Part shown: one piece after another, positions 1-30,451 of the stretch
Layout of the letters: the number at the start of each line of letters is the position of its first letter
Position numbering within the stretch: position 1 is the stretch's first letter
Assembly: GCA_002269645.1 (NCBI GenBank)
Contig: NIVC01002357.1
Location: 1-31,187 of the forward strand
DNA: 31,187 nt
Origin: Macrostomum lignano
Taxonomy: Eukaryota
Reading direction: 5' to 3'
Notes under the pieces: generated by a model
Database searches by the model: none
What the model was told of the DNA's origin: nothing
The model's input: only the letters and a program-made list of their open reading frames with translations
Made by a program: the position numbers and the translations under genes

Positions 1-12
1 TCTGCGGGCCAC

Positions 13-3000
13 AGTCTCCGATCGCTGTTTCTGTGTCTGATGCGTCATCGTCTCCAATCTCTGTTTCTGTGTCTGATGCGTCACCGTCTCTGATCTCTGT
101 TTCTGTGTTGATGCGTCACCGTCTCTGATCTCTGTTTCTGTGTTTGATGCGTCACCGTCTCTGATCTCTGTTTCTGTGTCTGATGCGTCACCGTCTCTGA
201 TCTCTGTTTCTGTGTCTGATGCGTCATCGTCTCTGATCTCTGTTTCTGTGTCTGATGCGTCACCGTCTCTGATCTCTGTTTCTGTGTCTGATGCGTCACC
301 GTCTCCGATCTCTGTTTCTGTGTCTGATGCGTCACCGTCTCTGATCTCTGTTTCTGTATCTGATGCGTCACCGTCTCGATCTCTGTTTCTGTGTCTGATG
401 CGTCACCGTCTCGATCACTGTTTCTGTGTTTGATGCGTCACCGTCTCTGATCTCTGTTTCTGTGTCTGATGCGTCATCGTCTCTGATCTCTGTTTCTGTG
501 TCTGATGCGTCACCGTCTCTGATCTCTGTTTCTGTGTCTGATGCGTCACCGTCTCTGATCTCTGTTTCTGTGTCTGATGCGTCACCGTCTCTGATCTCTG
601 TTTCTGTGTCTGATGCGTCATCGTCTCTGATCTCTGTTTCTGTGTCTGATGCGTCACCGTCTCTGATCTCTGTTTCTGTGTCTGATGCGTCACCGTCTCT
701 GATCTCTGTTTCTGTGTCTGATGCGTCACCGTCTCTGATCTCTGTTTCTGTATCTGATGCGTCACCGTCTCCGATCTCTGTTTCTGTGTCTGATGCGTCA
801 CCGTCTCTGATCTCTGTTTCTGTGTCTGATGCGTCATCGTCTCCGATCTCTGTTTCTGTGTCTGATGCGTCACCGTCTCTGATCTCTGTTTCTGTGTCTG
901 ATGCGTCACCGTCTCCGATCTCTGTTTCTGTGTCTGATGCGTCATCGTCTCCGATCTCTGTTTCTGTGTCTGATGCGTCACCGTCTCTGATCTCTGTTTC
1001 TGTGTCTGATGCGTCACCGTCTCCGATCTCTGTTTCTGTGTCTGATGCGTCACCGTCTCTGATCTCTGTTTCTGTATCTGATGCGTCACCGTCTCCGATC
1101 TCTGTTTCTGTGTCTGATGCGTCACCGTCTCCGATCACTGTTTCTGTGTTTGATGCGTCACCGTCTCTGATCTCTGTTTCTGTGTCTGATGCGTCATCGT
1201 CTCTGATCTCTGTTTCTGTGTCTGATGCGTCACCGTCTCTGATCTCTGTTTCTGTGTCTGATGCGTCACCGTCTCCGATCTCTGTTTCTGTGTCTGATGC
1301 GTCACCGTCTCTGATCTCTGTTTCTGTGTCTGATGCGTCACCGTCTCTGATCTCTGTTTCTGTGTCTGATGCGTCACCGTCTCTGATCGCTGTTTTTGTG
1401 TCCGATGCGTCACCGTCTCTGATCTCTGTTTTGTGTCGATGCGTCACCGTCTCCGATCTCTGTTTCTGTGTCTGATGCGTCACCGTCTCCGATCTCTGTT
1501 TCTGTGTCTGATGCGTCACCGTCTCTGATCTCTGTTTCTGTGTCTGATGCGTCACCGTCTCCGATCTCTGTTTCTGTGTCTGATGCGTCACCGTCTCTGA
1601 TCGCTGTTTCTGTGTCTGATGCGTCATCGTCTCCGATCTCTGTTTCTGTGTCTGATGCGTCACCGTCTCCGATCACTGTTTCTGTGTTGATGCGTCACCG
1701 TCTCTGATCTCTGTTTCTGTGTCTGATGCGTCACGTCTCTGATCTCTGTTTCTGTGTCTGATGCGTCACCGTCTCTGATCTCTGTTTCTGTGTCTGATGC
1801 GTCACCGTCTCTGATCTCTGTTTCTGTGTCTGATGCGTCACCGTCTCCGATCTCTGTTTCTGTGTCTGATGCGTCACCGTCTCTGATCTCTGTTTCTGTA
1901 TCTGATGCGTCACCGTCTCTGATCTCTGTTTCTGTGTCTGATGCGTCACCGTCTCCGATCTGTTTCTGTGTTTGATGCGTCACCGTCTCTGATCTCTGTT
2001 TCTGTGTCTGATGCGTCACCGTCTCTGATCTCTGTTTCTGTATCTGATGCGTCACCGTCTCCGATCTCTGTTTCTGTGTCTGATGCGTCACCGTCTCTGA
2101 TCTCTGTTTCTGTGTCTGATGCGTCATCGTCTCCGATCTCTGTTTCTGTGTCTGATGCGTCACCGTCTCTGATCTCTGTTTCTGTGTCTGATGCGTCACG
2201 TCTCTGATCTCTGTTTCTGTGTCTGATGCGTCACCGTCTCTGATCGCTGTTTTTGTGTCCGATGCGTCACCGTCTCTGATCTCTGTTTCTGTGTCTGATG
2301 CGTCACCGTCTCCGATCTCTGTTTCTGTGTCTGATGCGTCACCGTCTCCGATCTCTGTTTCTGTGTCTGATGCGTCACCGTCTCTGATCTCTGTTTCTGT
2401 GTCTGATGCGTCACCGTCTCCGATCTCTGTTTCTGTGTCTGATGCGTCACCGTCTCCGATCTCTGTTTCTGTGTCTGATGCGTCACCGTCTCCGATCTCT
2501 GTTTCTGTGTCTGATGCGTCACCGTCTCCGATCTCTGTTTCTGTGTTGATGCGTCACCGTCTCTGATCTCTGTTTCTGTGTCTGATGCGTCACCGTCTCT
2601 GATCTCTGTTTCTGTGTCTGATGCGTCACCGTCTCTGATCTCTGTTTCTGTGTCTGATGCGTCACCGTCTCTGATCTCTGTTTCTGTGTCTGATGCGTCA
2701 CCGTCTCTGATCTCTGTTTCTGTGTCTGATGCGTCACCGTCTCTGATCTCTGTTTCTGTGTCTGATGCGTCACCGTCTCCGATCTCTGTTTCTGTGTCTG
2801 ATGCGTCACCGTCTCCGATCACTGTTTCTGTGTTGATGCGTCACCGTCTCTGATCTCTGTTTCTGTGTCTGATGCGTCATCGTCTCTGATCTCTGTTTCT
2901 GTGTCTGATGCGTCACCGTCTCTGATCTCTGTTTCTGTGTCTGATGCGTCACCGTCTCTCTCTGTTTCTGTGTCTGATGCGTCTGTTTCTGTGTCTGATG

Positions 3001-3311
3001 CGTCACGTCTCTGATCTCTGTGTCTGATGCGTCACCGTCTCTGATCTCTGTTTCTGTGTCTGATGCGTCACCGTCTCTGATCTCTGTTTCTGTGTCTGAT
3101 GCGTCATCGTCTCTGATCTCTGTTTCTGTGTCTGATGCGTCACCGTCTCTGATCTCTGTTTCTGTGTCTGATGCGTCACCGTCTCTGATCTCTGTTTCTG
3201 TGTCTGATGCGTCACCGTCTCTGATCCTGATGCGTCACCGTCTCCGATCTCTGTTTCTGTGTCTGATGCGTCACCGTCTCTGATCGCTGTTTTTGTGTCC
3301 GATGCGTCACC
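13..3311. repeat. 36-bp tandem minisatellite, ~90 copies (TCTGTTTCTGTGTCTGATGCGTCACCGTCTCTGATC)
   Basis: Unit read directly. It gives 12-aa periodic ORFs (SVSVSDASPSLI / DGDASDTETEIR / TVTHQTQKQRSE). Recurrent variants (ctctga/ctccga, cacc/catc, tgtg/tgta) and scattered 1-nt deletions are present. Confidence 0.99.
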
Positions 3312-6010: not shown

Positions 6011-6715
6011 GGGAGGGAAAAGGGAATAGAGAGTGGGGAAGGGAGAGTGGGGAAGGGAGAGTGGGGAAGGGAGAGTGGGGAAGGGAGAGTGGGGAAGGGA
6101 GAGTGGGGAAGGGAGAGTGGGGAAGGGAGAGTGGGGAAGGGAGAGTGGGGAAGGGAGAGTATGGAAGGGAGAGTGGGGAAGGGAGAGTGGGGAAGGGAGA
6201 GTGGGGAAGGGAGAGTGGGGAAGGGAGAGTATGGAAGGGAGAGTGGGGAAGGGAGAGTGGGGAAGGGAGAGTGGGGAAGGGAGAGTAGGGAAGGGAGAGT
6301 GGGGAAGAGAGTGGGGAAGAGAGAGTGGGGAAGGGAGAGTGGGGAAGGGAGAGTGGGGAAGGGAGAGTGGGGAAGGGAGAGTCGGGAAGGGAGAGTGGGG
6401 AAGGGAGAGTGGGGAAGGGAGAGTGGGGAAGGGAGAGTGGCAATGGAGAGTGGGGAAGGGAGAGTGGGGAAGAGAGTGGGGAAGAGAGAGTGGGGAAGGG
6501 AGAGTGGGGAAGGGAGAGTGGGGAAGGGAGAGTGGGGAAGGGAGAGTCGGGAAGGGAGAGTGGGGAAGGGAGAGTGGGGAAGGGAGAGTGGGGAAGGGAG
6601 AGTGGCAATGGAGAGTGGGGAAGGGAGAGTGGGGAAGGGAGAGTAGCAATGGAGAGTGGGGAAGGGAGAGTAAGGAAGTGAGAGTGGGGAGCTGGAGAGA
6701 GTGGTAAAGGAAAGA
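6011..6715 (+). repeat. 14-bp purine-rich tandem array (GAGAGTGGGGAAGG)n, ~47 copies, G-quadruplex-prone
   Basis: Unit seen directly, with alternating GGGG and GGG runs and 2-nt/5-nt loops. It contains an internal 165-bp higher-order duplication. Confidence 0.98.
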
Positions 6716-7137: not shown

Positions 7138-11467
<4,330 letters not shown>

Positions 11468-11853
11468 TAAGATTGGCTCGGCAGGTTTTTTGTAGAAATT
11501 TTAAATGCTTCTTTCTTATCTTCTGCAACAGTCGTATCCATTGGCGCGGTTGTCTCCGGTTGAAATTTATTGTTTTTTAAGCCTACCAGTTTTTCCAAGA
11601 TATGTCTGATATCAGCTAGCAGCGAGGAGGCCAGTATTTCAGGAGTCCATGGCAAACTGCTGCACCGCCAAGTCTAAAAGCAGCTAGCCTTAAAATAAAT
11701 TTAAATGAATTGAATATTGCGCACTTATTCTTGTTATTTATTATTGTCGATTGATATAAGAGAGAGATGGGAGAGAATACGCTCGTGGGAATATGTTAGA
11801 TTATGCAAAATATATGAGATGGAGTAGAGATAGTTGGATCGAAAATTTGAACA

Positions 11854-12226
11854 GGTGAGATCAGAGTGAGATCAAAGTGAGAGAAAGGTGAGACATGTGA
11901 GATCAAAGTGAGAGAAAGGTGAGACATGTGAGATCAAAGTGAGAGAAAGGTGAGACATGTGAGATCAGAATTAGATAAAGGTGGGGCATGTGAGATCAAA
12001 GTGAGATAAAGGTGAGACATGTGAGATCAAAGTGAGATAAAGGTGAGATATGTGAGATCAAAGTGAGATAAAGGGGAGACAAAGGTGAGACGTGAGATCA
12101 AAGTGAGAAAAAGTAGGTGAGACATGTGAGATCAAAGTGAGATAAAGGTGAAACTTGTGAACTCAAAGTGAGATAAAGGTGAGGTAGGTGAGATCAAAGT
12201 GAGATAAAGGTGAGACAGGTGAGACA
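11854..12226. repeat. 31-bp tandem array built from GTGAGA subunits (GTGAGATCAAA-GTGAGATAAAG-GTGAGACAT), ~12 copies
   Basis: Unit and 11/11/9-nt substructure seen directly. It is followed by an A9 run at 12230-12238. Confidence 0.93.
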
Positions 12227-12834: not shown

Positions 12835-13623
12835 CTAACCAGCCAACAAACCAGTTATCCAACCATCTAACAACCAACCAGCCAACACACCAGTTATCCA
12901 ACCATCTAACAACCAACCAGCCAACACACCAGTTATCCAACCATCTAACAACCAACCAGCTAACACACCAGTCATCCAACCAACTAACCAAACCAGCTAA
13001 CACACCAGTCATCTAACCAACTAACCTAACCAGCTAACACACAGTCATCCAACCAACTAACCAAACCAGCTAACACACAGTCCTCCAACCAACTAACCAG
13101 ACCAGCTAACACACCAGTCATCCAACCAACTAACCAGACCAGCTAACACACCAGTCATCTAACCAACTAACCAAACCAGCTAACACACCAGTCATCCAAC
13201 CAACTAACCAGACCAGCTAACACACCAGTTATCTAACCAACTAACCAAACCAGCTAACACACCAGTCATCCAACCAACTAACCAGACCAGCTAACACACA
13301 GTCATCCAACCAACTAACCAAACCAGCTAACACACCAGTCATCCAACCAACTAACCAAACCAGCTAACACACCAGTCATCTAACCAACTAACCAAACCAG
13401 CTAACACACAGTCATCCAACCAACTAACCAAACCAGCTAACACACAGTCCTCCAACCAACTAACCAGACCAGCTAACACACCAGTCATCCAACCAACTAA
13501 CCAAACCAGCTAACACACAGTCCTCCAACCAACTAACCAGACCAGCTAACACACCAGTCATCCAACCAACTAACCTAATCAGCTAACACACCAGTCATCC
13601 AACCAACTAACCAAACCAGCCAA
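12835..13623. repeat. C/A-rich tandem array; first three units 39 bp, then 37-bp (and 35-bp) units (ACCAGTCATCCAACCAACTAACCAAACCAGCTAACAC)
   Basis: The ccagt anchor falls at 12851, 12890, 12929 and 12968 (39-bp spacing), then 13005 (37-bp spacing). Confidence 0.97.
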
Positions 13624-16712: not shown

Positions 16713-19253
16713 ATGCCATCATCTGGCAAGAAGGGCGGCAAGGGTGACAAGGAGAAGCGAAAGCGCGAGGCCGAGGAGCGCAGACGAATAGCAGAGGAGG
16801 AGGAGCGAATTCGCCAGGAGCAAGAGGAGCGGGAGCGCAGGAAACGCGAGAAAACGGAGGCTGAAGAGCGCAAGAAGCGGGAGAAGGCGGAGCAGAAGGT
16901 GCGCATAGTAGAGCTGGCCCAGCTGCGCGCTCTGCTTGGCGGCTACCACGCCAGCCGGGATGCCCATTTTGCCGCTCTGCGCCGCGACGAGCGCTGGCGT
17001 CGCTACCTGCGCTGCGACGGCTCTCCGGACCCGGTGGTGCTGCCCGAGATCAACACCTACATGGTGGCCTGGCGCGAGGACGACAAGCGGGTGCTTATCG
17101 AGGACGTGCTTGAAGACTCCAAGCCCTGTCTGGGCTTAATCGCCGAGCTCGAGGACCACCTGGCTGATGATGAAGCCAGTCCGGAGCAGGTGCGGCAGTA
17201 CCGCGGCACCATCGCCGATCTGCAGGCGCTGCTGCAGCAGAAGCTCAGCCGGGCAACCTACGAGATGCTGAGGCGGGGCGCCAACGCGGCAGACTCCGAG
17301 ACCATGAACCTGCAGGCCGTGTGGCGCAGCGACACGATCTGCCTGTGCCTGTGGGGCAACCTTAGCAAGAATCCGCGCATCAAGACATTCGAGTTCCCCG
17401 AGTCCGGCATCGGCTTCGACATTCCCAAGGCGTTGACAAAGGTTGGTTGCGCCTACCAGTTCCTGCTCACCACCTTCGACCATTACTCGCCCCAGTCGGC
17501 CAGTTTCTACGCTGTACCAATCAAAAAGGAAGAAGAGGTGGAGCCAGTTGTCGAGGAGGCCGAAGCGGCGGACGAGGCGGAGGGCGAGGGCGAAGGAGCT
17601 GAGAAGGGAGAAGAGCAGGTGGAAGAAGAGCCGGTCCGGGAACCGACTATGGACCTGATGGCGGAGCTGCAGCGAATGGACGGCGAGGAGCCGGAGGAGA
17701 AGGAGCCAGAGCCTGAGCCGGAGGAGGAGCTCGAGACGCCTGAAGAGGACCTCTGCGTGTCGCCACCACCAATGGAGTTCGAGGACTTCGATGGCGAAGA
17801 GGACGCAATGGATCTTCGCGGGTATCACACAATCGGCCCGGTGATGCAGTTCAACATTCTCCAGCTGCCGCCGCAGCCGCAGAACAAACGCGGCTGGACG
17901 ATCGTGCAGCACCTGGTGCCGCCTCAGCCAGTGAGCTTCGACTATCACCCCCAGCCGATTGTGCGCAAGGAACTCGAGGAGCTGCAGCAGCCCGACGAAG
18001 CCGGCGACGTGAATTCGGTGACTGAAGGCAGCAACCCAACGACTGTGAGCAACCAACTCACCGCCACCAGCACGCAGCAGCAAGCAGCCAACAAGAAGCA
18101 GCCAGAGATTGAGAATCCGCCAATTTCGGTGAGCTTCAAGCTCCCATCGAATGTGTTCTATGCCGAGGAACCTAAGGTGGCTTGCTGGGACGCCGAGCGC
18201 AAGGAGTGGCGCACGGACGGCATCGAGGTGACCAAATTCGACGAGGACAAGCGCGTCCTGAATTTCCGCACTTCGGTGTTCGGCACTCTGGGCTTCCTGC
18301 AGGACTTCCACATCAATATGCCATTCCAGCAGTGGGAGCTTCGGCCGCTCGGCACCCGCAGCTGCCGGCTGAGCATCATCGCCAGTATCAACGAAGTGGC
18401 AATCAATGTCAAGGAGGACCTGGTCTGCATCCCGGAGACGCCATCAGACGCGGCTGAAGACAGTCCGGAAGCAGATCCGGAGGTGCAGCTGGGCAAGCGG
18501 GAGCTTTCGCACCTGGAGGGCAAATGGATGCCTGTCAGAAGCCTCATCGCCTGTCTGCGTGCCGCAGGCGTTAACCTGTTCCCGCGCGAGGACTCGTCCA
18601 AGCACGTGGATGTGCCCGACAAGAGCAGCATTGCAGAACAGCGCCTCTACGAGCAGATGGCCCTGCTCAGCCCAGCCATGGCTTTTGCCTGGAGCCGCTG
18701 GAACTCGGAAATCAAGGATCGCGATTCGCTCATCGTACAGGTGAATTATTTTCAAATTGGGTCAAACCCTATAGATACCGCACCCTGAGAGTTCTCTACA
18801 TGCAGGTAATGAAATTGGCTATGCGCAAACGTCATAGGACTTGATCACCCATTTGACTTATTAGGATTTTTATAAGCCACAGTAAAGAGTGAACGGCGGG
18901 AGCAACCTTTGATTCGTTGAAAACCTCGTCATCTTATTAGTTTAGCATCGAAAACATCGAAAATTGACGTCCCACAGGCCTGCGAGCACATGGAGGACTG
19001 CTCGGTTAACGAAGATGACTATTACCTATTCACCGTCACCCGGAGACACGTCCGCCGGCTCAAGATCAAGGAGTTCGCCGAGGAGTTCAGCGACGAGCCG
19101 GACGAGGCGGTTGGTTATCACGCGGATTTCTACAATTCGTTCCAAGAGTTCAGCAGCCAAGAGGCCAAGGACAGGGTGGCCGAGGTGGACTTCCAGTACC
19201 TCAAGACCGTTACGGACCTCCTGTCGGCCACCCGGATGCTGGTGTTCTCATGA
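16713..19253 (+). CDS. DNAI7: Dynein axonemal intermediate chain 7 / CASC1 (Las1) homolog, ~767 aa; exons 16713-18740 and 18978-19253
   Basis: N-terminal K/E/R coiled coil followed by ERWRRYLRCDGSPDP..EINTYM..W (Casc1_N-like), LCLWGNLSKNPRIK, PKVACWD..W..DGI, NMPFQQWELRP, FAWSRWN and C-terminal TDLLSATRMLVFS*. The donor CAG|GTGAAT at 18740/18741 and the acceptor cccacag|GCC at 18977/18978 join in phase 0 (..LIVQ|ACEHM..). Confidence 0.9.
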
Positions 19254-24575: not shown

Positions 24576-25499
24576 TCAGCGCAGAATGACAGCGAGTTTA
24601 TCCGCACTTTGTACGCTCAGCTTCCAAGTGACGTTATGTGAGGTGGTGTACAATAGCCGCGGCGGCGAGGTCATGTTGCCGCCGGCCCAGTCGACAGCGC
24701 AGCCGTCGGTTACGTCGAGAGCTACCATGAGGCCGAGATCGCCCGAGCAGCCGCCGTAAGCATAATTGATGAACCAGCGACGCTCGAGTATGCCATCAGA
24801 ATGACCTTCGATGCTGAAGTAGTTGAAGGTCCTGCTGGCAAGGTCGGTGACGGGCCAGCTGGCCTTCAGCCGGTCCCGAGAGAACCAGTTGGTCCTGTTT
24901 AGCTCGTGAGGCGACGCTGAGAGGTCGAAGGTGACCTTCACGACGACGGAGTCGGCGACAGAGAGCTGGACGACGGCCTCCTTGAAGGTGAGCTTCGGCG
25001 CTACGGTGGGCAGCTGGTCGATGGCGCTGGCGCGGAACAGGTCGGGCAGGAGGCTGGCGGACCCGGGTGTGCCCTGGACGGCGGAGCCGTTGCTGCGGCT
25101 CGGCGAGTCGACCAGATCGAACGACTTGACGCCGACGCCCGCTCGGATGCTCAGCGCGAGGAAGCCGCGCTCGGCGATGTCGCAGGACACGAGGCAGCGG
25201 CCCCCTGCCGAGGCCGAGACGGGGCAGGCGGCGAAGTCGCCGCAGTCGGTCGGGCGACGCTCGCAGACACCGGCGGCGGCGTCCCACGTGACCGACTCGC
25301 CCGCGGCGGCTCCCGTCGGCTGCGGCAGGTCCGGCCGGAAGCAGCCGCGGACGCCTTGGCTGCCGCTGGCGACTCGAACCGGCGGCTCGCAGATCGATGC
25401 GAACTGCGACTCCGTGAAGCAGCCGAGCTGTCCGGCGGCGGCCCCGGCGGCCAGCAGCAGCGCCAGGCACGTCAGGAGTGTCGCACCGGACGACTTCAT
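24576..25499 (-). CDS. Secreted Cys-rich protein of unknown function, paralogue A (307 aa), intronless
   Basis: ATG, then a hydrophobic signal peptide (LLTCLALLLAAGAAAG), 8 Cys in the N-terminal part and a C-terminal WFSRDRL..DL..FSIEG..RRWFINYAYGGC..D.G..C module. Codon usage is GC3-rich like the other real genes, and two paralogues conserve the frame. Confidence 0.85.
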   Translation of the reverse strand: MKSSGATLLTCLALLLAAGAAAGQLGCFTESQFASICEPPVRVASGSQGVRGCFRPDLPQPTGAAAGESVTWDAAAGVCERRPTDCGDFAACPVSASAGGRCLVSCDIAERGFLALSIRAGVGVKSFDLVDSPSRSNGSAVQGTPGSASLLPDLFRASAIDQLPTVAPKLTFKEAVVQLSVADSVVVKVTFDLSASPHELNRTNWFSRDRLKASWPVTDLASRTFNYFSIEGHSDGILERRWFINYAYGGCSGDLGLMVALDVTDGCAVDWAGGNMTSPPRLLYTTSHNVTWKLSVQSADKLAVILR

Positions 25500-26187
25500 T
25501 GTTCAGTGCAAGTCTATGTCAGTGGTTTGGCCAGTCGATTTTTCTCTTCCAGTTTTGAGCGGCTCTAACGCTTGCTGGTTTTAGAGCATTTATTTCGCTT
25601 GCTGCCGGATCCAGCAAAACTTTTTGCGGATTGGCTGGGGGATTTTGGTCTCGCCCTGCAGACTCATCAATTATTGGGCACGGCCATCTTTGCAGGACTC
25701 CGGAGATCCGCAAGACGGCTGTTTTGACAACGAAGTGAGGGGCTTGCAAGCTGAGTTGCTGTACTCTTCAAATTGCAAGAGTGGAAAAGTTTGCGTCCGA
25801 TTAGGCATAGAAAACCTGCTTACTCAGGCTACGTTAAAAAGAATTTGAAGCAGCAATGTTAGCTACTAAGCACGCATTATTGTTCCCTCCTGGGGACCAG
25901 CGGCTGCGGATTAATTAATTAATGATGAGGCTACTCAGGAAGACTGGCTGGAGGAAGAGGCAACTGTTTCAGGCAGAAACTTTTCTTAACAAGTGGAGGA
26001 CTTTAAACTGTTTCGACTGCAAGAAATTGCCAGCCAAAGTATTGGAGAGGCGCGCTGGACTCTGCGACTAAGAGGCAGAATTCGTTTTCAAAATAAATGT
26101 ACATTTATGCATTCCATGTGGAGTTTCTAGACCGAACACTTTTACCCGTTGTAAAAGAAGACAATTGGTGCAAAATCCGTTGTTGTC

Positions 26188-26500
26188 GTTGTGGCAGCCT
26201 AGTAGTCCAGTGCGGTGTTCTGATGTGCCAACGGCCCAGGTTCGATTCCAAGTGCAGTCACATTAATTTGAGGCTAAATTTGAATCTCGGCTTGACTCTG
26301 CTCGTGCAATTAACGCACTTGAAGGTCAACTCCCAAGGCAAAGTGAAGTGTACATGTCTAACGACAAAGAAAGTTAGGGCCGCTGTACACTCCTGTGTGA
26401 GTGTGTGTGCCTGTGCGTATGACTGAGTACGTATCCGCGCGCTTGGACCCTTGGAGTGTGCCTGCTCAGGTGAGTCGGCGGAATGTGCAGTAATGCCTCT
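26188..26500 (+). mobile_element. Putative tRNA-derived SINE (degenerate tRNA head 26188-26260 plus body shared with 19749-19890)
   Basis: Perfect B-box GGTTCGATTCC at 26239-26249 and an A-box-like CAGCCTAGTAG at 26195-26205. Spacing is tRNA-like (position 8 to T54 = 46 nt), but the acceptor and T stems do not pair, so this is not a functional tRNA. The downstream body has a second diverged copy in the window. Confidence 0.55.
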
Positions 26501-26954
26501 CGCAGGTTGTGCGACAATGTCGCTTAATGTGCGCCAGTGTGCACACACCATCCTGCCTCTAATAAAACACGAGTAAAAGAAGTCTAGCACATATTCGAAC
26601 TTCATTTGCAATGCGGCAGGACAGAAGGTGAGAAGTCAATTTACCGCTACGCAACTGATAATCCCCCCCTATTACCGATAATGCAAATTCAGACAAAGCT
26701 GGCCATATTTGCCAGCCATTTAATTCGCACTGGACATTGTCTCTTGGCCTTGACAATTCCTTAAAATCTTTGCATACGTGACTGACATTTAGGATACCAA
26801 AACATTGATAGTTAAATTTAAGTTTTTACGGATTTATTGATATTTGCAAAGACTGGTTACCATAGCAGTATAAGGTATCGAACCTGAAGTAGAAGAGCGG
26901 CAATTATAGATGTTGTGCTACTAACTATCTGCACTGAACCATAGAAGATTCATT

Positions 26955-27490
26955 GCACGTCGCAACGCCTCTGGATCTCCTCCAGGCTTCCCTCTGCACG
27001 TCCCAACGCCTCTGGATCTCCTCCAGGCTTCCCTCTGCACGTCGCAACGCCTCTGGATCTCCTCCAGGCTTCCCTCTGCACGTCGCAACGCCTCTGGATC
27101 TCTCCAGGCTTCCCTCTGCACGTCCCAACGCCTATCTGGATCTCTCCAGGCTTCCCTGTGCACGTCCCAACGCCTCTGGATCTCTTCAGGCTTCCCTGTG
27201 CACGTCCCAACGCCTCTGGATCTCTCCAGGCTTCCCTGTGCACGTCCCAACGCCTCTGGATCTCCTCCAGGCTTCCCTCTGCACGTCCCAACGCCTCTGG
27301 ATCTCCTCCAGGCTTCCCTCTGCACGTCCCAACGCCTCTGGATCTCCTCCAGGCTTCCCTCTGCACGTCCCAACGCCTCTGGATCTCTCCAGGCTTCCCT
27401 CTGCACGTCCCAACGCCTCTGGATCTCCTCCAGGCTTCACCCATCGCGTCCCAACGCCTATGGATTTGCGGGCTTCACTCATCGTGTCCC
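26955..27490. repeat. 41-bp (40-43 bp variants) tandem array, ~12 copies plus degenerate terminal units (GCACGTCCCAACGCCTCTGGATCTCCTCCAGGCTTCCCTCT)
   Basis: The gcacgt anchor falls at 26955 and 26996 (41-bp spacing). The array lies between paralogues A and B. Confidence 0.97.
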
Positions 27491-27796
27491 AAAGTCTAAA
27501 TAAAACTCATTTGCGTCAAATTTATAGTACTGAGGCCGAGCTTCCAAGCCGACCACAGTCACCACATCTGAAATATATTTCCTCAAAGATGAAACTTCGT
27601 TCTACTGATAATAAACTGACTGGATAGCAAGGAATTCTTTAGACTAAATTGCAGCCGGGCTCAGAATTTAAGACAGAAAGAGCATTACTGTGCATTGTGC
27701 GCAAGTTTCGGATTGCAAAACATTCGGTCTAAAATGGATAACACTGCCAGCAGCAGCCACCCTCTGCACTGCCAGCTCACACTGGTTTCAGGCAGC

Positions 27797-28702
27797 TCAG
27801 CGTAGGGTCACGGCCAGCCTGTCAGCAAGCTGGAAACTGCTCTTAAACGCCACATCCGACTGCGTGCTGTACACCAGCCGCGGCGGCGAGGTCACACTGC
27901 CGTTGCCCCAGGAGGCAGCGCAGCCGTCGGTTATGTCGAGAGCCACCATGAGGCCGCGGTCTCTGTTGCAGCCGCCGTAAGCATAATTGATGAACCAACG
28001 GCGCTCAAGTTTACGCTTGACATGACCCCCAATGCTGAAGTAGTTAAAGCTCTTTCTGGCGAGGTCGGTGACGGGCCAGCTGGCCTTCAGCCGGTCCCGA
28101 GAGAACCAGTTGGTCCTGTTTAGCTCGTGAGGCGACGCTGAGAGGTCGAAGGTGACCTTCACAACGACGGAGTCGGCGACAGAGAGCTGGACGACGGCCT
28201 CCTTGAAGGTGAGCTTCGGCGCTACGGTGGGCAGCTGGTCGATGGCGCTGGCGCGGAACAGGTCGGGCAGGAGGCTGGCGGACCCGGGTGTGCCCTGGAC
28301 GGCGGAGCCGTTGCTGCGGCTCGGCGAGTCGACCAGATCGAACGACTTGACGCCGACGCCCGCTCGGATGCTCAGCGCGAGGAAGCCGCGCTCGGCGACG
28401 TCGCAGGACACGAGGCAGCGGCCCCCTGCCGAGGCCGAGACGGGGCAGGCGGCGAAGTCGCCGCAGTCGGTCGGGCGACGCTCGCAGACACCGGAGTCGG
28501 CGTCCCACGTGACCGACTCGCCCGCGGCGGCTCCCGTCGGCTGCGGCAGGTCTGGCCGGAAGCAGCCGCGGACGCCTTGGCTGCCGCTGGCGACTCGAAC
28601 CGGCGGCTCGCAGATCGAGGCGAACTGCGACTCCGTGAAGCAGCCGGGCTCAGCAGCGGCGCCCACCAGCAGCACCAAGCACGTCAAGAGTGGCGCAATC
28701 AT
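27797..28702 (-). CDS. Secreted Cys-rich protein of unknown function, paralogue B (301 aa), intronless
   Basis: The first ATG is at 28702 (MIAPLLTCLVLLVGAAAEPG signal peptide); the supplied ORF starts at a TTG. The core is nearly identical to paralogue A and it ends ..LADRLAVTLR*. Confidence 0.85.
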   Translation of the reverse strand: MIAPLLTCLVLLVGAAAEPGCFTESQFASICEPPVRVASGSQGVRGCFRPDLPQPTGAAAGESVTWDADSGVCERRPTDCGDFAACPVSASAGGRCLVSCDVAERGFLALSIRAGVGVKSFDLVDSPSRSNGSAVQGTPGSASLLPDLFRASAIDQLPTVAPKLTFKEAVVQLSVADSVVVKVTFDLSASPHELNRTNWFSRDRLKASWPVTDLARKSFNYFSIGGHVKRKLERRWFINYAYGGCNRDRGLMVALDITDGCAASWGNGSVTSPPRLVYSTQSDVAFKSSFQLADRLAVTLR

Positions 28703-29295
28703 TTTTGCAGACAAATTTTCAACTGGTGAAAAGCAGCAGTGCGAAAACAACGAGGGAACAAAAAAGCGGCCATGTTTGATCTCTTATACCTGACCCAGTT
28801 AACTTCCCAGTTAACTGCACACTCTGGCCAGAGGGGGATTCTCTAGCAAGTAAAACGTGTTGAGCCGGGCTGAGCAGCTCAGTAAGGTGCTCAGAGTGCC
28901 GGTCTGTTTACTCAAATTTCCGCTAAAGGCTATCAAAACACGCCGTTTCTATGGTGACGGGGCCAGCGCAATTCTTCCGCAAATTTCCTCGGTAGGAGAA
29001 ACGAATTCACTACTCAGTTATCAGCAAACAATTGCGTTTGACACTAAAGGTGAGTCAACTTGGGTAACTTAGATTTTTGCAAAAAGCAAAGAGGATTTTT
29101 GTGACGCTTTCAAAATTTCCTGCAGTCGTCAAATATCCTGCAGGTAACGGGCTAGTCACACAATGAGCTGCTTAAAGTGGAAGCCGTATTCAGGCATACA
29201 AGGCTTGGGCTCAGTCGGCTCTCCCTCAAAATTCCAATGCAAATTGAACCACAGCTTAACTCTTGCAACAAGACGCCATAGAAGTGCGTCCGCAT

Positions 29296-29309
29296 GTTTC
29301 CATGGAAAC
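29296..29309. promoter_or_regulatory. Perfect palindromic RFX X-box GTTTCCATGGAAAC between divergently transcribed paralogues B and C
   Basis: Exact match to GTTNCCATGGNAAC. It lies ~230 bp upstream of the C ATG and ~590 bp upstream of the B ATG. Confidence 0.7.
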
Positions 29310-29535
29310 GCAGTGCTTACCCCAAGCAATTTTATAATTGGTACCCAGCAGGTGCGTTTCCTGCAAGCCTTCTTAAATTATTAACCAAGCAATGAGTCTG
29401 CCTGTTTACGAACTGCCAAGCAGCACAGGGCCGGTGGGGAAGCTGGCAGGTATACGCTCGTAATATATGCGGAAGAATGGGTAGAGAGGAAAACTGCTTT
29501 AAGTTGATTCTAACGTAATCCACTGTACGACAGAC

Positions 29536-30451
29536 ATGGCGCATGCGAGGGTGCCGCTCCTGACGTGCCTGGCGCTGCTGCTGGGCGCCGGGGCCGGACA
29601 GCCCGGCTGCTTCACGGAGTCGCAGTTCGCATCGATCTGCGAGCCGCCGGCTCGAGTCGCCAGCGCCAGCCAAGGCGTCCGCGGCTGCTTCCGGCCGGAC
29701 CTGCCGCAGCCGACGGAGCCACCGCGGGCGAGTCGGTCACGTGGGACGCCGACTCCGGTGTCTGCGAGCGTCGCCCGACTGACTGTGGCGACTTCGCCGC
29801 CTGCCCCGTCTCGGCCTCGGCGGGAGGCCGCTGCCTTGTGTCCTGCGACGTCGCCGAGCGCGGCTTCCTCGCGCTGAGCATCCGAGCGGGCGTCGGCGTC
29901 AAGTCGTTCGATCTGGTCGACTCGCCGAGCCGCAGCAACGGCTCCGCCGTCCAGGGTACGCCCGGGTCCGCCAGCCTCCTGCCCGACCTGTTCCGCGCCA
30001 GCGCCATCGACCAGCTGCCCACCGTAGCGCCGAAGCTCACCTTCAAGGAGGCCGTCGTCCAGCTCTCTGTCGCCGCCTCTGTCGTCCTGAAGGTCACCTT
30101 CGACCTCTCGGCGTCGCCTAACGAGCTGAACAGGACCAGCTGGTTCTCTCGGGACCGGCTGAAGGCCAGCTGGCCCGTCACCGACCTCGCCAGCAGGACC
30201 TTCCACTTCTTCAGCATTGCTGGCGATGCTAGTGAACAGCGTCGCTGGTTAATTCACTATTATTACGGCGGCTGCCCGGGTGATCTTGTACTCATGGTAC
30301 TCGTAGCTCTCGACGTAACCGACGGCTGCACTGTCGACTGGGCCGGCGGCAACATGACCTGGCCGCCGCAGCTGGTGTACAGCACGCAGCCGGACGTGCC
30401 GCTTGAGACGAGTTCCGCCTTGCTGACAAGCTGGTCGTGACGCTACGCTAG
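29536..30451 (+). CDS. Secreted Cys-rich protein of unknown function, paralogue C (305 aa if two 1-nt deletions are restored); possible pseudogene or assembly errors
   Basis: Signal peptide MAHARVPLLTCLALLLGAGAGQPG. GGG has become GG at 29715-29716 relative to A/B (ACG GGA GCC), and an apparent TTT has become TT at 30413-30414. Restoring both gives ..SFRLADKLVVTLR* (TAG 30449-30451), matching the A/B C-termini, and a length of 918 nt (a multiple of 3). Confidence 0.8.

What the first reader, a model, noticed from the sequence alone, without database searches (positions are those of the whole stretch)
24576..30451. Three-gene secreted-protein cassette with a homogenised constant core and a hypervariable C-terminal module
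Seen: over ~585 bp (A 24841-25425 vs B 28062-28646) I count only 6 substitutions (3 amino-acid changes in ~195 aa, synonymous sites also conserved). The last 86 aa differ at about 30 positions. Changes cluster in short segments between invariant anchors: FSI-EGHSDGIL / GGHVKRKL / AGDASEQ-(E)RRW; GGC-SGDL / NRDR / PGDL; C-AVDWAGGNM / AASWGNGSV / TVDWAGGNM. B becomes markedly basic. The 5' and 3' flanks of the three genes show no similarity. Inference: the duplicates are old, gene conversion keeps the N-terminal core constant, and the C-terminal domain diversifies, as expected for a recognition or effector family (innate immunity, allorecognition, mucus/adhesion, toxin, reproductive protein). 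From memory the C-terminal WFS..RL..S..DL..FSI.G..RR.FI...YGGC..D.G module resembles an unnamed domain in predicted marine-invertebrate secreted proteins. I cannot name a Pfam family for it.
Basis: partly seen in the sequence, partly recalled or inferred. Interest (0 to 1): 0.8.

Follow-up and report, generated by a model that had tools for sequence, protein, structure and literature searches.

The report
Gene-converted fibrinogen-like gene trio, flatworm
Three neighbouring, unannotated genes for a secreted, distantly fibrinogen-like protein in the flatworm Macrostomum lignano keep a nearly identical middle by copying sequence from one another, while their older, different ends are stable, not hypervariable: ordinary gene-family evolution in an uncharacterised protein family.

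Summary
Genes A (24576-25499, -) and B (27797-28702, -) differ at 6 of 585 core bases and at 30 of the last 86 residues. The flanks are unalignable.

The window is contig NIVC01002357.1 of Macrostomum lignano (GCA_002269645.1). The genes are not annotated there.

Gene conversion of the core is well supported:
- dS is 0.03 in the core against 0.4-0.8 at the ends.
- The gene is a significant mosaic.
- A second syntenic copy of the locus shows no locus-specific signal in the core. There B differs from its counterpart B' at 8 sites, and A differs from B' at 5. Paralogs share polymorphisms.

"Hypervariable" is not supported:
- C-terminal dN/dS is 0.3-0.7, and at most 0.9 in the chosen loops.
- The module differs by only 0.8-1.6% between the two locus copies.
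- Its variable positions are the ones that vary across the whole family.

The C-terminal "module" is not a separate domain. It is the last third of one roughly 230-residue domain. That domain belongs to a large unnamed family found in Myxococcota, corals, molluscs, echinoderms, amphioxus and flatworms. A confident model of a relative matches ficolin and fibrinogen folds.

Function is inferred only: an extracellular ligand binder.

The parts
24576..25499 (-). Gene A: intact single-exon CDS, 307 aa plus stop. It has a signal peptide (residues 1-~23), a Cys-containing N-terminal stretch, then a divergent fibrinogen-related-like domain that runs to the C-terminus.
   Evidence: ORF. The domain is matched by the family profile over residues ~110-307. 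An exact copy lies in contig NIVC01003180.1. A 98.4% identical intact counterpart A' lies in NIVC01000396.1. The signal peptide is by inspection only.
27797..28702 (-). Gene B: intact single-exon CDS, 301 aa plus stop, starting at the ATG at 28702. Its C-terminal third is basic.
   Evidence: ORF. pI of the C-terminal 86 aa is 10.0. An intact 98.0% identical counterpart B' lies in NIVC01000396.1.
29536..30451 (+). Copy C: inverted and head-to-head with B. The frame is broken twice by 1-bp deletions, in a GG run at 29715-29716 and a TT run at 30413-30414. With both restored it reads 305 aa and ends in the family-typical ...LADKLVVTLR*.
   Evidence: The same sequence, frameshifts included, is in the redundant contig NIVC01003180.1. 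C is absent at the syntenic position of NIVC01000396.1, where synteny breaks at window 29502.
24843..25424 (-). Homogenised (gene-converted) tract in A, codons 26-219.
   Evidence: Maximum chi-square segment with 6/582 differences to B. dS is 0.026. GC3 is 0.91.
28064..28645 (-). Homogenised tract in B, the counterpart of A 24843-25424.
   Evidence: Variants are shared with A, A' and C across the two locus copies.
29605..30185 (+). Homogenised tract in C. It is slightly older or less often converted: 18-21 differences in 582 nt to A, A', B and B'.
24579..24842 (-). Locus-specific C-terminal third of A (codons 220-307). It is the last third of the same domain, not a separate module.
   Evidence: A-B dS is 0.83 and dN 0.25. 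It differs at only 2/258 nt from A'. Synonymous sites of the last 26 codons are saturated against B and C.
27800..28063 (-). Locus-specific C-terminal third of B.
   Evidence: It differs at 4/258 nt from B'.
30186..30448 (+). C-terminal third of C. It is a mosaic: like A in codons 256-280 and like B in codons 281-309.
   Evidence: Site patterns. Runs test P<5e-5.
26954..27465 (.). 41-bp minisatellite (12.6 copies) in the A-B spacer. It is not part of the genes. Its length varies between the locus copies.

Best explanation
This is a small local gene family in the neopolyploid flatworm Macrostomum lignano. It holds two intact genes (A, B) and one probably decaying copy (C).

The encoded proteins are secreted, Cys-containing and carry N-glycosylation sequons. 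Their single globular domain is a very divergent member of the fibrinogen-related-domain (FReD) superfamily. It belongs to a large, unnamed family that keeps only the FReD/COLFI-like N-terminal half and has its own C-terminal half.

The duplicates are old. Recurrent interlocus (non-allelic) gene conversion keeps a ~0.58-kb central tract (codons ~26-219) almost identical among the copies. The signal-peptide codons and the last ~88 codons carry the older, locus-specific divergence.

Shorter and older exchanges have also made the C-terminal third a mosaic. That third evolves under purifying to relaxed constraint. The fold-determining anchor residues are fixed and the intervening positions drift. 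It is not measurably hypervariable.

What is shown: the anatomy, the conversion signatures, membership of the protein family and the fold class of that family.

What is inferred: the proteins act extracellularly as ligand binders, lectin-like by analogy with ficolins, tachylectins, FREPs and intelectins. A and B have different ligand or charge preferences through their C-terminal thirds. The conversion tract stops where it does because divergence beyond it is too high for heteroduplex formation. Selection for paralog-specific ends may also contribute.
For: Conversion:
- Core dS is 0.026 (A-B) and 0.075-0.09 (to C). It is 0.26-0.50 in the signal-peptide codons and 0.39-0.83 in the C-terminal third.
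- Breakpoints are significant.
- Informative sites switch topology along the gene: A=C in codons 1-26, A=B in 27-221, A=C in 256-280 and B=C in 281-309. Runs test P<5e-5.
- GC3 is 0.91 in the tract and 0.70-0.73 after it.
- Flanks are unalignable.

Independent test with a second syntenic copy of the locus (NIVC01000396.1, 95-99% identical in its flanks):
- Core differences out of 585 are A-A' 2, B-B' 8, A-B 7, A-B' 5 and A'-B 7, so there is no locus-specific signal.
- At codon 108, A and B' have ATC while A' and B have GTC. Together with codon 76 this gives all four gametes.
- B' shares C's states at codons 194 and 204.
- The ends are strictly locus-specific. In the C-terminal third A-A' is 2/258 and B-B' 4/258, against A-B 72/258.

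Constraint:
- C-terminal dN/dS is 0.30, 0.40 and 0.72. At the anchors it is 0.05 (A-B), and in the chosen loops 0.6-0.9.
- Varying positions coincide with family-wide variable columns.

Protein identity:
- The proteins have no Pfam or NCBIfam hit.
- The profile search finds 1160 cluster representatives at E<=1e-3. The domain is usually C-terminal.
- Relatives carry the VYCDM..DGGGWT motif. They hit only the first ~50 positions of PF00147, the first ~100 of PF01410, and NF040941.
- The AlphaFold model of relative P0002 has pLDDT 93. It matches M-ficolin, FGL1, tenascin, angiopoietin and intelectin at E 2e-7 to 1e-5 with TM 0.45-0.56.
- A's own model (pLDDT 68) retrieves only FReDs, weakly.

Origin:
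- The window's aquaporin is in NCBI on a 31187-bp contig.
- That contig is NIVC01002357.1 of GCA_002269645.1.
- M. lignano is a neopolyploid (PMC10733133, PMC10468722).
Against: - There is no expression evidence. A, B and C are not among the called genes of the NCBI record, so they might be weakly expressed or silent.
- Function rests on fold analogy only. The FReD signature (GGGW) is lost in A/B/C. The C-terminal half does not align to the ligand-binding P subdomain of fibrinogen gamma.
- A's own structural model is of modest confidence.
- I cannot say whether NIVC01000396.1 is an allele or a homeolog.
- Only five sequences were available, so site-level positive selection cannot be excluded. 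One candidate is codon 252, which changed in both A/A' and B/B'.
- The direction and dates of the conversions are not resolved.
- All sequences come from one long-read assembly with demonstrable homopolymer indel errors.
Confidence: 0.73

Rival explanations
1. The C-terminal third is a recognition module under diversifying selection. Selection for diversity is what keeps conversion out of it, as in immune or reproductive recognition families.
For: - The differences lie between invariant anchors and change charge strongly. B's C-terminal pI is 10.0, and B' adds N252K.
- Codon 252, next to the invariant Cys251, has states S, P, N, K, P and S in A, A', B, B', C and P0008. It changed non-synonymously in both locus pairs.
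- Local windows have dN>=dS: codons 256-285 and the B-C tail, omega 1.2, not significant.
- In canonical FReDs the C-terminal part carries the binding site (established knowledge).
Against: - Overall omega is 0.30-0.72, significantly below 1 for A-B and A-C.
- The loops were chosen after the fact for being variable, yet still give omega 0.6-0.9.
- The module is as stable as the rest of the gene between the two locus copies, with 2 non-synonymous and 4 synonymous changes.
- Synonymous divergence is as large as expected for age alone.
- Variable positions are the family-wide unconstrained ones. They are spread over strands and loops alike.
- The module itself shows conversion mosaicism.
Confidence: 0.13
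2. Assembly artefact. The identical core is a collapsed or chimeric repeat, and the mosaic pattern was produced by mis-joining reads of a polyploid, repeat-rich genome.
For: - The assembly has redundant contigs and homopolymer indel errors. Two 99.95% identical representations differ by 5 indels in 10.2 kb.
- M. lignano is a neopolyploid that is hard to assemble (PMC10733133).
Against: - A and B differ at 6 core sites and have distinct ends and flanks.
- The A-B arrangement is found in two diverged contigs (the window and NIVC01000396.1), each with its own variants. The A-B-C arrangement recurs only in the near-identical contig NIVC01003180.1.
- A related copy with the same core and yet another C-terminal mosaic exists in an independent older annotation (P0008).
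Confidence: 0.04
3. No conversion. The duplication is recent, extreme constraint (including on synonymous sites) acts on the core, and both ends evolve fast.
For: The core is GC-rich (GC3 0.91). It carries long ORFs in other frames, so an overlapping constraint cannot be dismissed by inspection alone.
Against: - Synonymous divergence at the ends is 10-30 times that of the core, and the flanks are unalignable.
- Topology changes along the gene.
- Polymorphisms are shared between paralogs across the two locus copies, with four gametes. Constraint cannot produce that.
- Alternative-frame ORFs are expected in GC-rich DNA.
Confidence: 0.03
4. The copies are non-functional relics: unexpressed ORFs of a dying family, with conversion only a by-product of proximity.
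For: - None of the three is annotated in the NCBI record.
- C is frameshifted and missing from the second locus copy.
Against: - A and B are intact in both diverged locus copies.
- All family-invariant residues are kept.
- dN/dS is well below 1 at the anchors (0.05 for A-B) and in the core (~0.3).
Confidence: 0.07

Closest known systems
Fibrinogen-related domain (FReD, Pfam PF00147) proteins: ficolins, tachylectin-5, FGL1, tenascin, angiopoietins, snail FREPs
   Same: - Secreted proteins with one globular domain of ~220-230 residues at the C-terminus.
- Relatives of A/B/C keep the A-subdomain motif (VYCDM..DGGGWT) and hit PF00147 positions ~2-55.
- A confident model of a relative superposes on ficolin, FGL1 and tenascin at TM 0.45-0.56, E about 1e-7.
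- hhalign aligns the first half to fibrinogen gamma at 80% probability.
- Multigene families with gene conversion are known for snail FREPs (established knowledge).
   Different: - A/B/C give no PF00147 hit and have lost GGGW.
- The C-terminal ~110-150 residues (NWF..R..SSW.DL..N.FSI.G..RRFFIN..YGGC..D.GW..C.W..Y..AD..AV.VR) align to no FReD P subdomain.
- There is no Ca2+-site motif.
- There is no IgSF, collagen or coiled-coil partner domain.
NCBIfam NF040941 (GGGWT_bact), 'fibrinogen-like YCDxxxxGGGW domain-containing protein' of bacteria, mostly Myxococcota
   Same: Bacterial members of the same family profile (P0002, P0040, P0048, P0084, P0154, P0171) hit this 46-position model at 46-78 bits. 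They continue with the same C-terminal half as A/B/C.
   Different: The model covers only the N-terminal 46 residues. A has no hit. The part that differs among A, B and C is not described by any curated model.
Fibrillar collagen C-propeptide domain (COLFI, PF01410)
   Same: Coral and bacterial relatives hit COLFI positions ~17-112 at or just above the cut-off.
   Different: Only the N-terminal part matches. There is no collagen triple helix upstream, and A/B/C give no hit.
Intelectins / X-type lectins (human ITLN1, Xenopus XEEL)
   Same: - The pattern is the same: a short FReD-like N-terminal match followed by a family-specific remainder.
- The relative's model hits 4wmq and 4wmo at E 8e-7 to 5e-6.
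- The profile weakly hits XEEL by sequence.
   Different: TM is lower (0.34-0.43) than to ficolins. There is no alignable intelectin-specific region. Not a member.
Partial concerted evolution of tandem paralogs, for example the human gamma-globin pair, RHD/RHCE and opsins (named from general knowledge)
   Same: Old duplicates with a sharply bounded, nearly identical tract, divergent ends and flanks, shared polymorphism between paralogs and raised GC3.
   Different: Nothing unusual in mechanism. The particulars are the inverted third copy, which is probably a pseudogene and shares variants with B and B', and the neopolyploid background.

Membership tests
Fibrinogen_C (PF00147) / canonical FReD | Pfam PF00147 match above the gathering score | tested here: not met
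   A, B and C have no hit at E<=1. Relatives pass only through positions ~2-55 of 221.
Fibrinogen_C (PF00147) / canonical FReD | A-subdomain signature C..(Y)CDM..(D)GGGWT | tested here: not met
   A reads ...RCLVSCDIAERGFLALSIR. The Cys and Asp are kept, and GGGW is replaced by ERGF.
Fibrinogen_C (PF00147) / canonical FReD | FReD three-dimensional fold | tested here: inconclusive
   The model of relative P0002 (pLDDT 93) matches FReDs at TM 0.45-0.56 and probability 1.00. A's own model (pLDDT 68) retrieves only FReDs, but at E 0.04 and TM 0.30-0.37.
Fibrinogen_C (PF00147) / canonical FReD | P-subdomain with a Ca2+ site and ligand pocket (FST.D.DND ... C..GGWW..C) | tested here: not met
   hhalign aligns only the first ~100 columns to fibrinogen gamma. 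The PDB profile search matches only the CDM..GGGW stretch.
Unnamed FReD-like family (profile built here; 1160 representatives) | Significant sequence similarity over the ~190-residue domain | tested here: met
   BLASTP of A to P0002 gives 9e-14 and to P0001 3e-15. Against the representatives it gives 1e-14 to 4e-26 for relatives at 30-48% identity (5e-133 for P0008, 80% identical).
Unnamed FReD-like family (profile built here; 1160 representatives) | C-terminal motif set: W205-F, R210, S214, D219-L, N226-x-F-S-I-x-G232, R240, F243-I, C251-x-x-D254-x-G, C267-x-x-x-W271 (C-x-W in most relatives), Y284, A299-D, and the domain ending the protein | tested here: met
   Present in A, B and frame-restored C. 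136 of 200 domain hits end within 15 residues of the protein's C-terminus.
Unnamed FReD-like family (profile built here; 1160 representatives) | N-terminal-half motifs W.LAFRG and HYRN..LDNW | tested here: not met
   A/B/C have FLALSIRAG and no HYRN/DNW equivalent. They form a divergent Macrostomum branch.
NCBIfam NF040941 GGGWT_bact | Match above the 30-bit cut-off | tested here: not met
   A has no hit. Bacterial relatives score 46-78 bits.
Snail-type FREPs (IgSF + FReD diversified immune lectins) | One or two N-terminal IgSF domains joined to a canonical FReD | tested here: not met
   No IgSF or other Pfam domain in A/B/C. The N-terminal ~80 residues are predicted with low confidence.
Intelectin / X-type lectin | Intelectin-specific fold beyond the FReD-like start | tested here: not met
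   Foldseek TM to 4wmq/4wmo is 0.34-0.43, below the ficolin values. The sequence match is limited to the GGGW stretch.
Paralogs under interlocus gene conversion (concerted evolution) | Synonymous divergence heterogeneous along the gene, with sharp boundaries | tested here: met
   dS is 0.026 against 0.83. Maximum chi-square is 150 against a null maximum of 26.
Paralogs under interlocus gene conversion (concerted evolution) | Phylogenetic incongruence along the gene, and polymorphism shared between paralogs | tested here: met
   Site patterns and runs test. The five-sequence table shows four gametes at codons 76/108, and B-B' differences are at least as many as A-B'.
Families under diversifying selection | dN/dS > 1 in the variable region, and excess non-synonymous differences between alleles or homeologs | tested here: not met
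   Omega is 0.30-0.72 over the whole C-terminal third and 0.6-0.9 in the chosen loops. There are 2 non-synonymous and 4 synonymous changes between the locus copies. Power is low with five sequences.

The most novel reading that the evidence does not exclude
The trio may be a templated-diversification unit. The frameshifted, inverted copy C (and further copies elsewhere in the genome) would serve as a silent donor. Short conversion tracts from it would shuffle variants into the expressed genes A and B. Suggestive signs are that B' carries C's states at codons 194 and 204, B carries them at 75 and 76, and A' carries one at 252. The locus-specific C-terminal thirds, with a hot spot at codon 252 next to the invariant Cys, would set the ligand specificity of a flatworm recognition-lectin family (immune, reproductive or adhesive). 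In that case the unnamed FReD-like family found from Myxococcota to amphioxus would be a new class of lectin.
Probability: 0.1. Interest if true: 0.6.

Novelty: new member of a known kind. Interest (0 to 1): 0.3.

Why it matters
- **Annotation.** The work adds two or three unannotated genes to the Macrostomum lignano reference. It also shows that a conspicuous 'constant core / variable end' pattern here is ordinary partial concerted evolution and not a hypervariable recognition system.
- **An uncurated family.** Its wider use is as a pointer to a large, phylogenetically scattered domain family. The family has at least 1160 clusters at 50% identity in Myxococcota, corals, gastropods, echinoderms, amphioxus and flatworms. 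No curated model describes its C-terminal ~150 residues, and no member has a known function. A Pfam-type model and one ligand-binding experiment would give names to thousands of 'uncharacterized' proteins.
- **A testable system.** The locus is also a compact case for studying interlocus conversion in a neopolyploid animal in which transgenesis and RNAi are established.

Tried and rejected
- **Pfam, NCBIfam and PDB by sequence.** Pfam on A/B/C gave nothing except a chance DUF5490 hit at E 0.26. NCBIfam on A gave nothing. A PDB sequence search with the first profile gave only a chance reductase hit.
- **Word-indexed homology search.** It returned only 2, 4 and 28 proteins. It missed the 80% identical Macrostomum protein P0008, which the exhaustive profile search found. 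Its sparse output should not be read as rarity.
- **Exact look-ups.** A and the Casc1 ORF gave nothing. A, B and three other ORFs gave nothing. Only the aquaporin ORF from its first ATG worked, and that identified the contig.
- **Collection scans.** A metagenome scan for close relatives of A found none.
- **NIVC01000396.1 beyond the break.** The 1.5 kb held there has no similarity to the window. I could not tell whether C' lies further on.
- **P subdomain.** hhalign of the family profile to fibrinogen gamma did not reach the P subdomain.
- **RNA genes.** tRNA and Rfam scans of the window were negative.
- **Literature.** Searches for the family in Macrostomum or molluscs found nothing specific.
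- **Host.** I first guessed an arthropod host from the 7tm_6/Trehalose_recp hits. This was rejected once the contig was identified.
- **Burial of variable residues.** It could not be computed because the model's coordinates are not returned. Only secondary structure was used.

Full report
**1. What is in the sequence**

The region holds three copies of one single-exon reading frame.
- A: 24576-25499 (-), 307 aa.
- B: 27797-28702 (-), 301 aa from the ATG.
- C: 29536-30451 (+), inverted and head-to-head with B.

No further copy is in the window.

- There are 6 substitutions in 585 bp between A 24841-25425 and B 28062-28646.
- There are 3 amino-acid changes in 195 core residues and 30 in the last 86.
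- B's C-terminal third is basic, with pI 10.0 against 6.0 and 5.0.
- The flanks do not match each other.
- A two-breakpoint maximum chi-square test places the low-divergence tract at codons 26-219. Chi-square is 150 against a largest value of 26 in 200 permutations.

One is a GG run at 29715-16 where A/B have GGG. The other is a TT run at 30413-14 where B has TTT. With both restored, C ends in the family-typical ...LADKLVVTLR*.

**2. Where the window comes from**

The closest protein found is a Macrostomum lignano UniRef entry, P0008. It is a 2216-aa fused gene model, 80% identical to A over residues 23-287.

The window's aquaporin ORF, read from its first ATG, is in NCBI on a contig of exactly 31187 bp. 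That contig is NIVC01002357.1 of assembly GCA_002269645.1. The called genes of that record are a 7tm_7 receptor, the aquaporin, Casc1 and a CDGSH protein. They do not include A, B or C.

M. lignano is a neopolyploid with duplicated subgenomes (PMC10733133, PMC10468722).

**3. Evolutionary analysis within the window**

Nei-Gojobori estimates:

| Region | A-B dS / dN | A-C | B-C |
|---|---|---|---|
| Core (codons 27-221) | 0.026 / 0.007 | dS 0.075 | dS 0.09 |
| Signal-peptide codons | dS 0.26 | dS 0.28 | dS 0.50 |
| C-terminal third | 0.83 / 0.25 | 0.58 / 0.23 | 0.39 / 0.28 |

dS is therefore strongly non-uniform.

Informative sites change topology along the gene:
- A=C in the signal peptide.
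- A=B in the core (17 sites against 3 and 4).
- A=C in codons 256-280 (11 against 4).
- B=C in codons 281-309 (27 against 5 and 4).

A runs test gives P<5e-5, also within the C-terminal third alone. That third is thus a mosaic too and is not exempt from exchange. GC3 is 0.91 in the tract against 0.70-0.73 after it. This fits long-term GC-biased conversion but does not prove it.

**4. Test with other copies of the locus**

Through the window's own aquaporin and CDGSH proteins I fetched syntenic contigs.

*NIVC01003180.1* is a redundant copy, 99.95% identical over 10.2 kb.
- Its only differences are five 1-bp homopolymer indels. The assembly therefore does contain such errors.
- A, B and C, including both frameshifts, are identical in the two contigs.
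- At that error rate I expect ~0.2 indel in C per contig. I therefore think the frameshifts are more likely real, but the contigs may share reads.

*NIVC01000396.1* is a diverged second copy, with flanks 95-99% identical.
- It has intact A' (98.4% aa identity) and B' (98.0%).
- Synteny breaks at window 29502, 34 bp before C's ATG. The 1.5 kb beyond is unrelated.

The five-sequence table is decisive:

| Region | A-A' | B-B' | A-B | A-B' | A'-B |
|---|---|---|---|---|---|
| Core (of 585 nt) | 2 | 8 | 7 | 5 | 7 |
| C-terminal third (of 258 nt) | 2 | 4 | 72 | 71 | 71 |
| Signal-peptide codons | 2/78 | 2/60 | 13/60 | 15/60 | 13/60 |

- In the core, counterparts are no closer than paralogs.
- Codon 108 is ATC in A and B' but GTC in A' and B. 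With codon 76 this gives all four gametes.
- B' shares C's states at codons 194 and 204, and B shares them at 75 and 76.
- The ends group strictly by locus.

This is the signature of recurrent interlocus conversion confined to the central tract.

**5. Is the C-terminus hypervariable?**

- Overall omega is 0.30 (Fisher P=3e-5 against neutrality), 0.40 (P=0.003) and 0.72 (not significant).
- The invariant 'anchor' codons give omega 0.05 for A-B.
These were chosen for being variable, so this is an upper bound.
- A's last 26 codons are saturated at synonymous sites against B and C (pS 0.8-0.9). This indicates great age.
- Between the two locus copies the third shows 2 non-synonymous and 4 synonymous changes, no more than the rest of the gene.
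- Positions that vary among A, B and C are the columns that vary across the family. Mean entropy is 2.62 against 1.70 bits, P=5e-4.
- These positions lie in strands and loops in the same proportions as constant ones.

The data fit old divergence under purifying to relaxed constraint. One curiosity remains. Both non-synonymous changes between locus copies hit codon 252, next to the invariant Cys251. It reads S, P, N, K and P in A, A', B, B' and C, and S in P0008.

**6. What the protein is**

A, B and C have no Pfam or NCBIfam match. An exhaustive profile search finds 1160 cluster representatives at E<=1e-3 and 100 at E<=1e-30.

The matched unit covers A residues ~110-307. It usually ends the protein (136 of 200 hits) and is sometimes repeated. 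The 'module' motifs are the best conserved part of that domain.

Named members come from Myxococcota, corals, gastropods, a crinoid, a starfish, amphioxus and Macrostomum. All are 'uncharacterized' or 'hypothetical'.

Many relatives start with ...Y.I.P...F.VYCDM..DGGGWTMV. They hit only:
- the first ~50 positions of Fibrinogen_C;
- the first ~100 positions of COLFI;
- the 46-position NCBIfam model GGGWT_bact.

Structure and profile comparisons:
- A profile search of PDB sequences touches tenascin, XEEL, angiopoietin and ficolin through that stretch only.
- AlphaFold2 of relative P0002 gives pLDDT 93. It superposes on M-ficolin, FGL1, tenascin, angiopoietin and intelectin at E 2e-7 to 1e-5 and TM 0.45-0.56.
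- A's own model has pLDDT 68, with the N-terminal ~90 residues unreliable. It retrieves only FReDs, but weakly.

I conclude that this is a divergent branch of the FReD superfamily with its own C-terminal half. A/B/C form a further diverged Macrostomum sub-branch. They have lost GGGW and the HYRN..DNW motifs but keep every invariant residue of the C-terminal half.

By inspection, A has a signal peptide, 11 Cys and four N-x-S/T sites.

**7. Mechanism and function**

*Shown:* old local duplicates; recurrent conversion of codons ~26-219 among A, B and C-type sequences; locus-specific, constrained ends; family and fold class.

*Inferred:* the products are secreted ligand binders of lectin type, and A and B differ in specificity or charge preference through the C-terminal third. 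The tract ends where sequence divergence (~25%) no longer supports heteroduplex formation. Selection for distinct ends may contribute, but the data do not require it.

No expression data were available. The genes are unannotated, so a silent-relic reading keeps some weight. Intact frames in both locus copies and omega well below 1 argue against it.

**8. Verdict**

The 'hypervariable recognition module' inference is not supported. The finding is an ordinary case of partial concerted evolution. Its interest lies mainly in flagging unannotated genes and a large uncurated FReD-like family.

Noticed in passing
window 1-31187: The window is the whole contig NIVC01002357.1 of Macrostomum lignano GCA_002269645.1. 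Contig NIVC01003180.1 repeats its last 10.2 kb at 99.95% identity. The only differences are five 1-bp homopolymer indels, at window 22122, 22944, 23766, 30941 and 31033. This gives a direct measure of residual indel error and of redundancy in the assembly.
   Followed up: yes
window 29502 / L004 1-1503: In the second syntenic copy (NIVC01000396.1) similarity to the window stops 34 bp before C's start codon. The junction is low-complexity (A8...G10...T5C7), and the next 1.5 kb is unrelated. This could be a deletion of C, an insertion, or a rearrangement between the inverted B/C repeats. I could not extend the locus.
   Followed up: partly
codon 252 of A/B/C (A 24744-24746; B 27965-27967; C 30276-30278): The residue after the invariant Cys251 is S, P, N, K and P in A, A', B, B' and C, and S in P0008. 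It is the only codon with a non-synonymous change in both the A/A' and B/B' pairs within the C-terminal third. It may be a selected or hypermutable site. One site is only an anecdote.
   Followed up: partly
window 10-3311, 6029-6690, 11853-12224, 12837-13620, 26954-27465: The window is unusually rich in long minisatellites. There are 92 copies of a 36-mer, 48 of a 14-mer, 21 of a 37-mer and 12.6 of a 41-mer. The 41-mer array between A and B, and the 37-mer array, align with variable register and length to the other locus copies.
   Followed up: partly
window 8829-11335 (-): Two long ORFs are separated by a 44-bp tandem repeat (9605-9828). They correspond to an annotated 801-aa gene with 7tm_7/Trehalose_recp hits, an insect-type gustatory-receptor-like protein in a flatworm. 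It has a long disordered, Arg/Ala-rich N-terminal extension.
   Followed up: partly
window 16713-18788 (+): The Casc1/DNAI7-like gene is annotated with different product lengths in the locus copies: 651 aa in NIVC01000396.1 and 767 aa in the window and others. This suggests a gene-model or indel difference between copies.
   Followed up: no
window ~26195-26262: The stretch ...TAGTCCAGTGCGGT...GGTTCGATTCC... looks like tRNA A-box and B-box elements, perhaps a tRNA-derived SINE or a decayed tRNA. ARAGORN and Rfam found nothing there.
   Followed up: partly
P0008 (UniRef A0A1I8IVZ4) residues ~1305-1571: A fourth member of the subfamily is buried in a 2216-aa fused model named 'Protein-tyrosine-phosphatase'. 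It has the same core (with C's D183A state) and another C-terminal mosaic: B-like GGHVK, DR and ASWGNGSV with C-like QLVYSTQP. The word-indexed homology search missed it entirely.
   Followed up: partly
family-wide: The same domain occurs in Myxococcota proteins next to myxobacterial Cys-rich repeats (DUF4215/TIGR02232). It also occurs in scattered marine invertebrate phyla. This patchy bacteria-animal distribution might reflect horizontal transfer or ancient origin.
   Followed up: no
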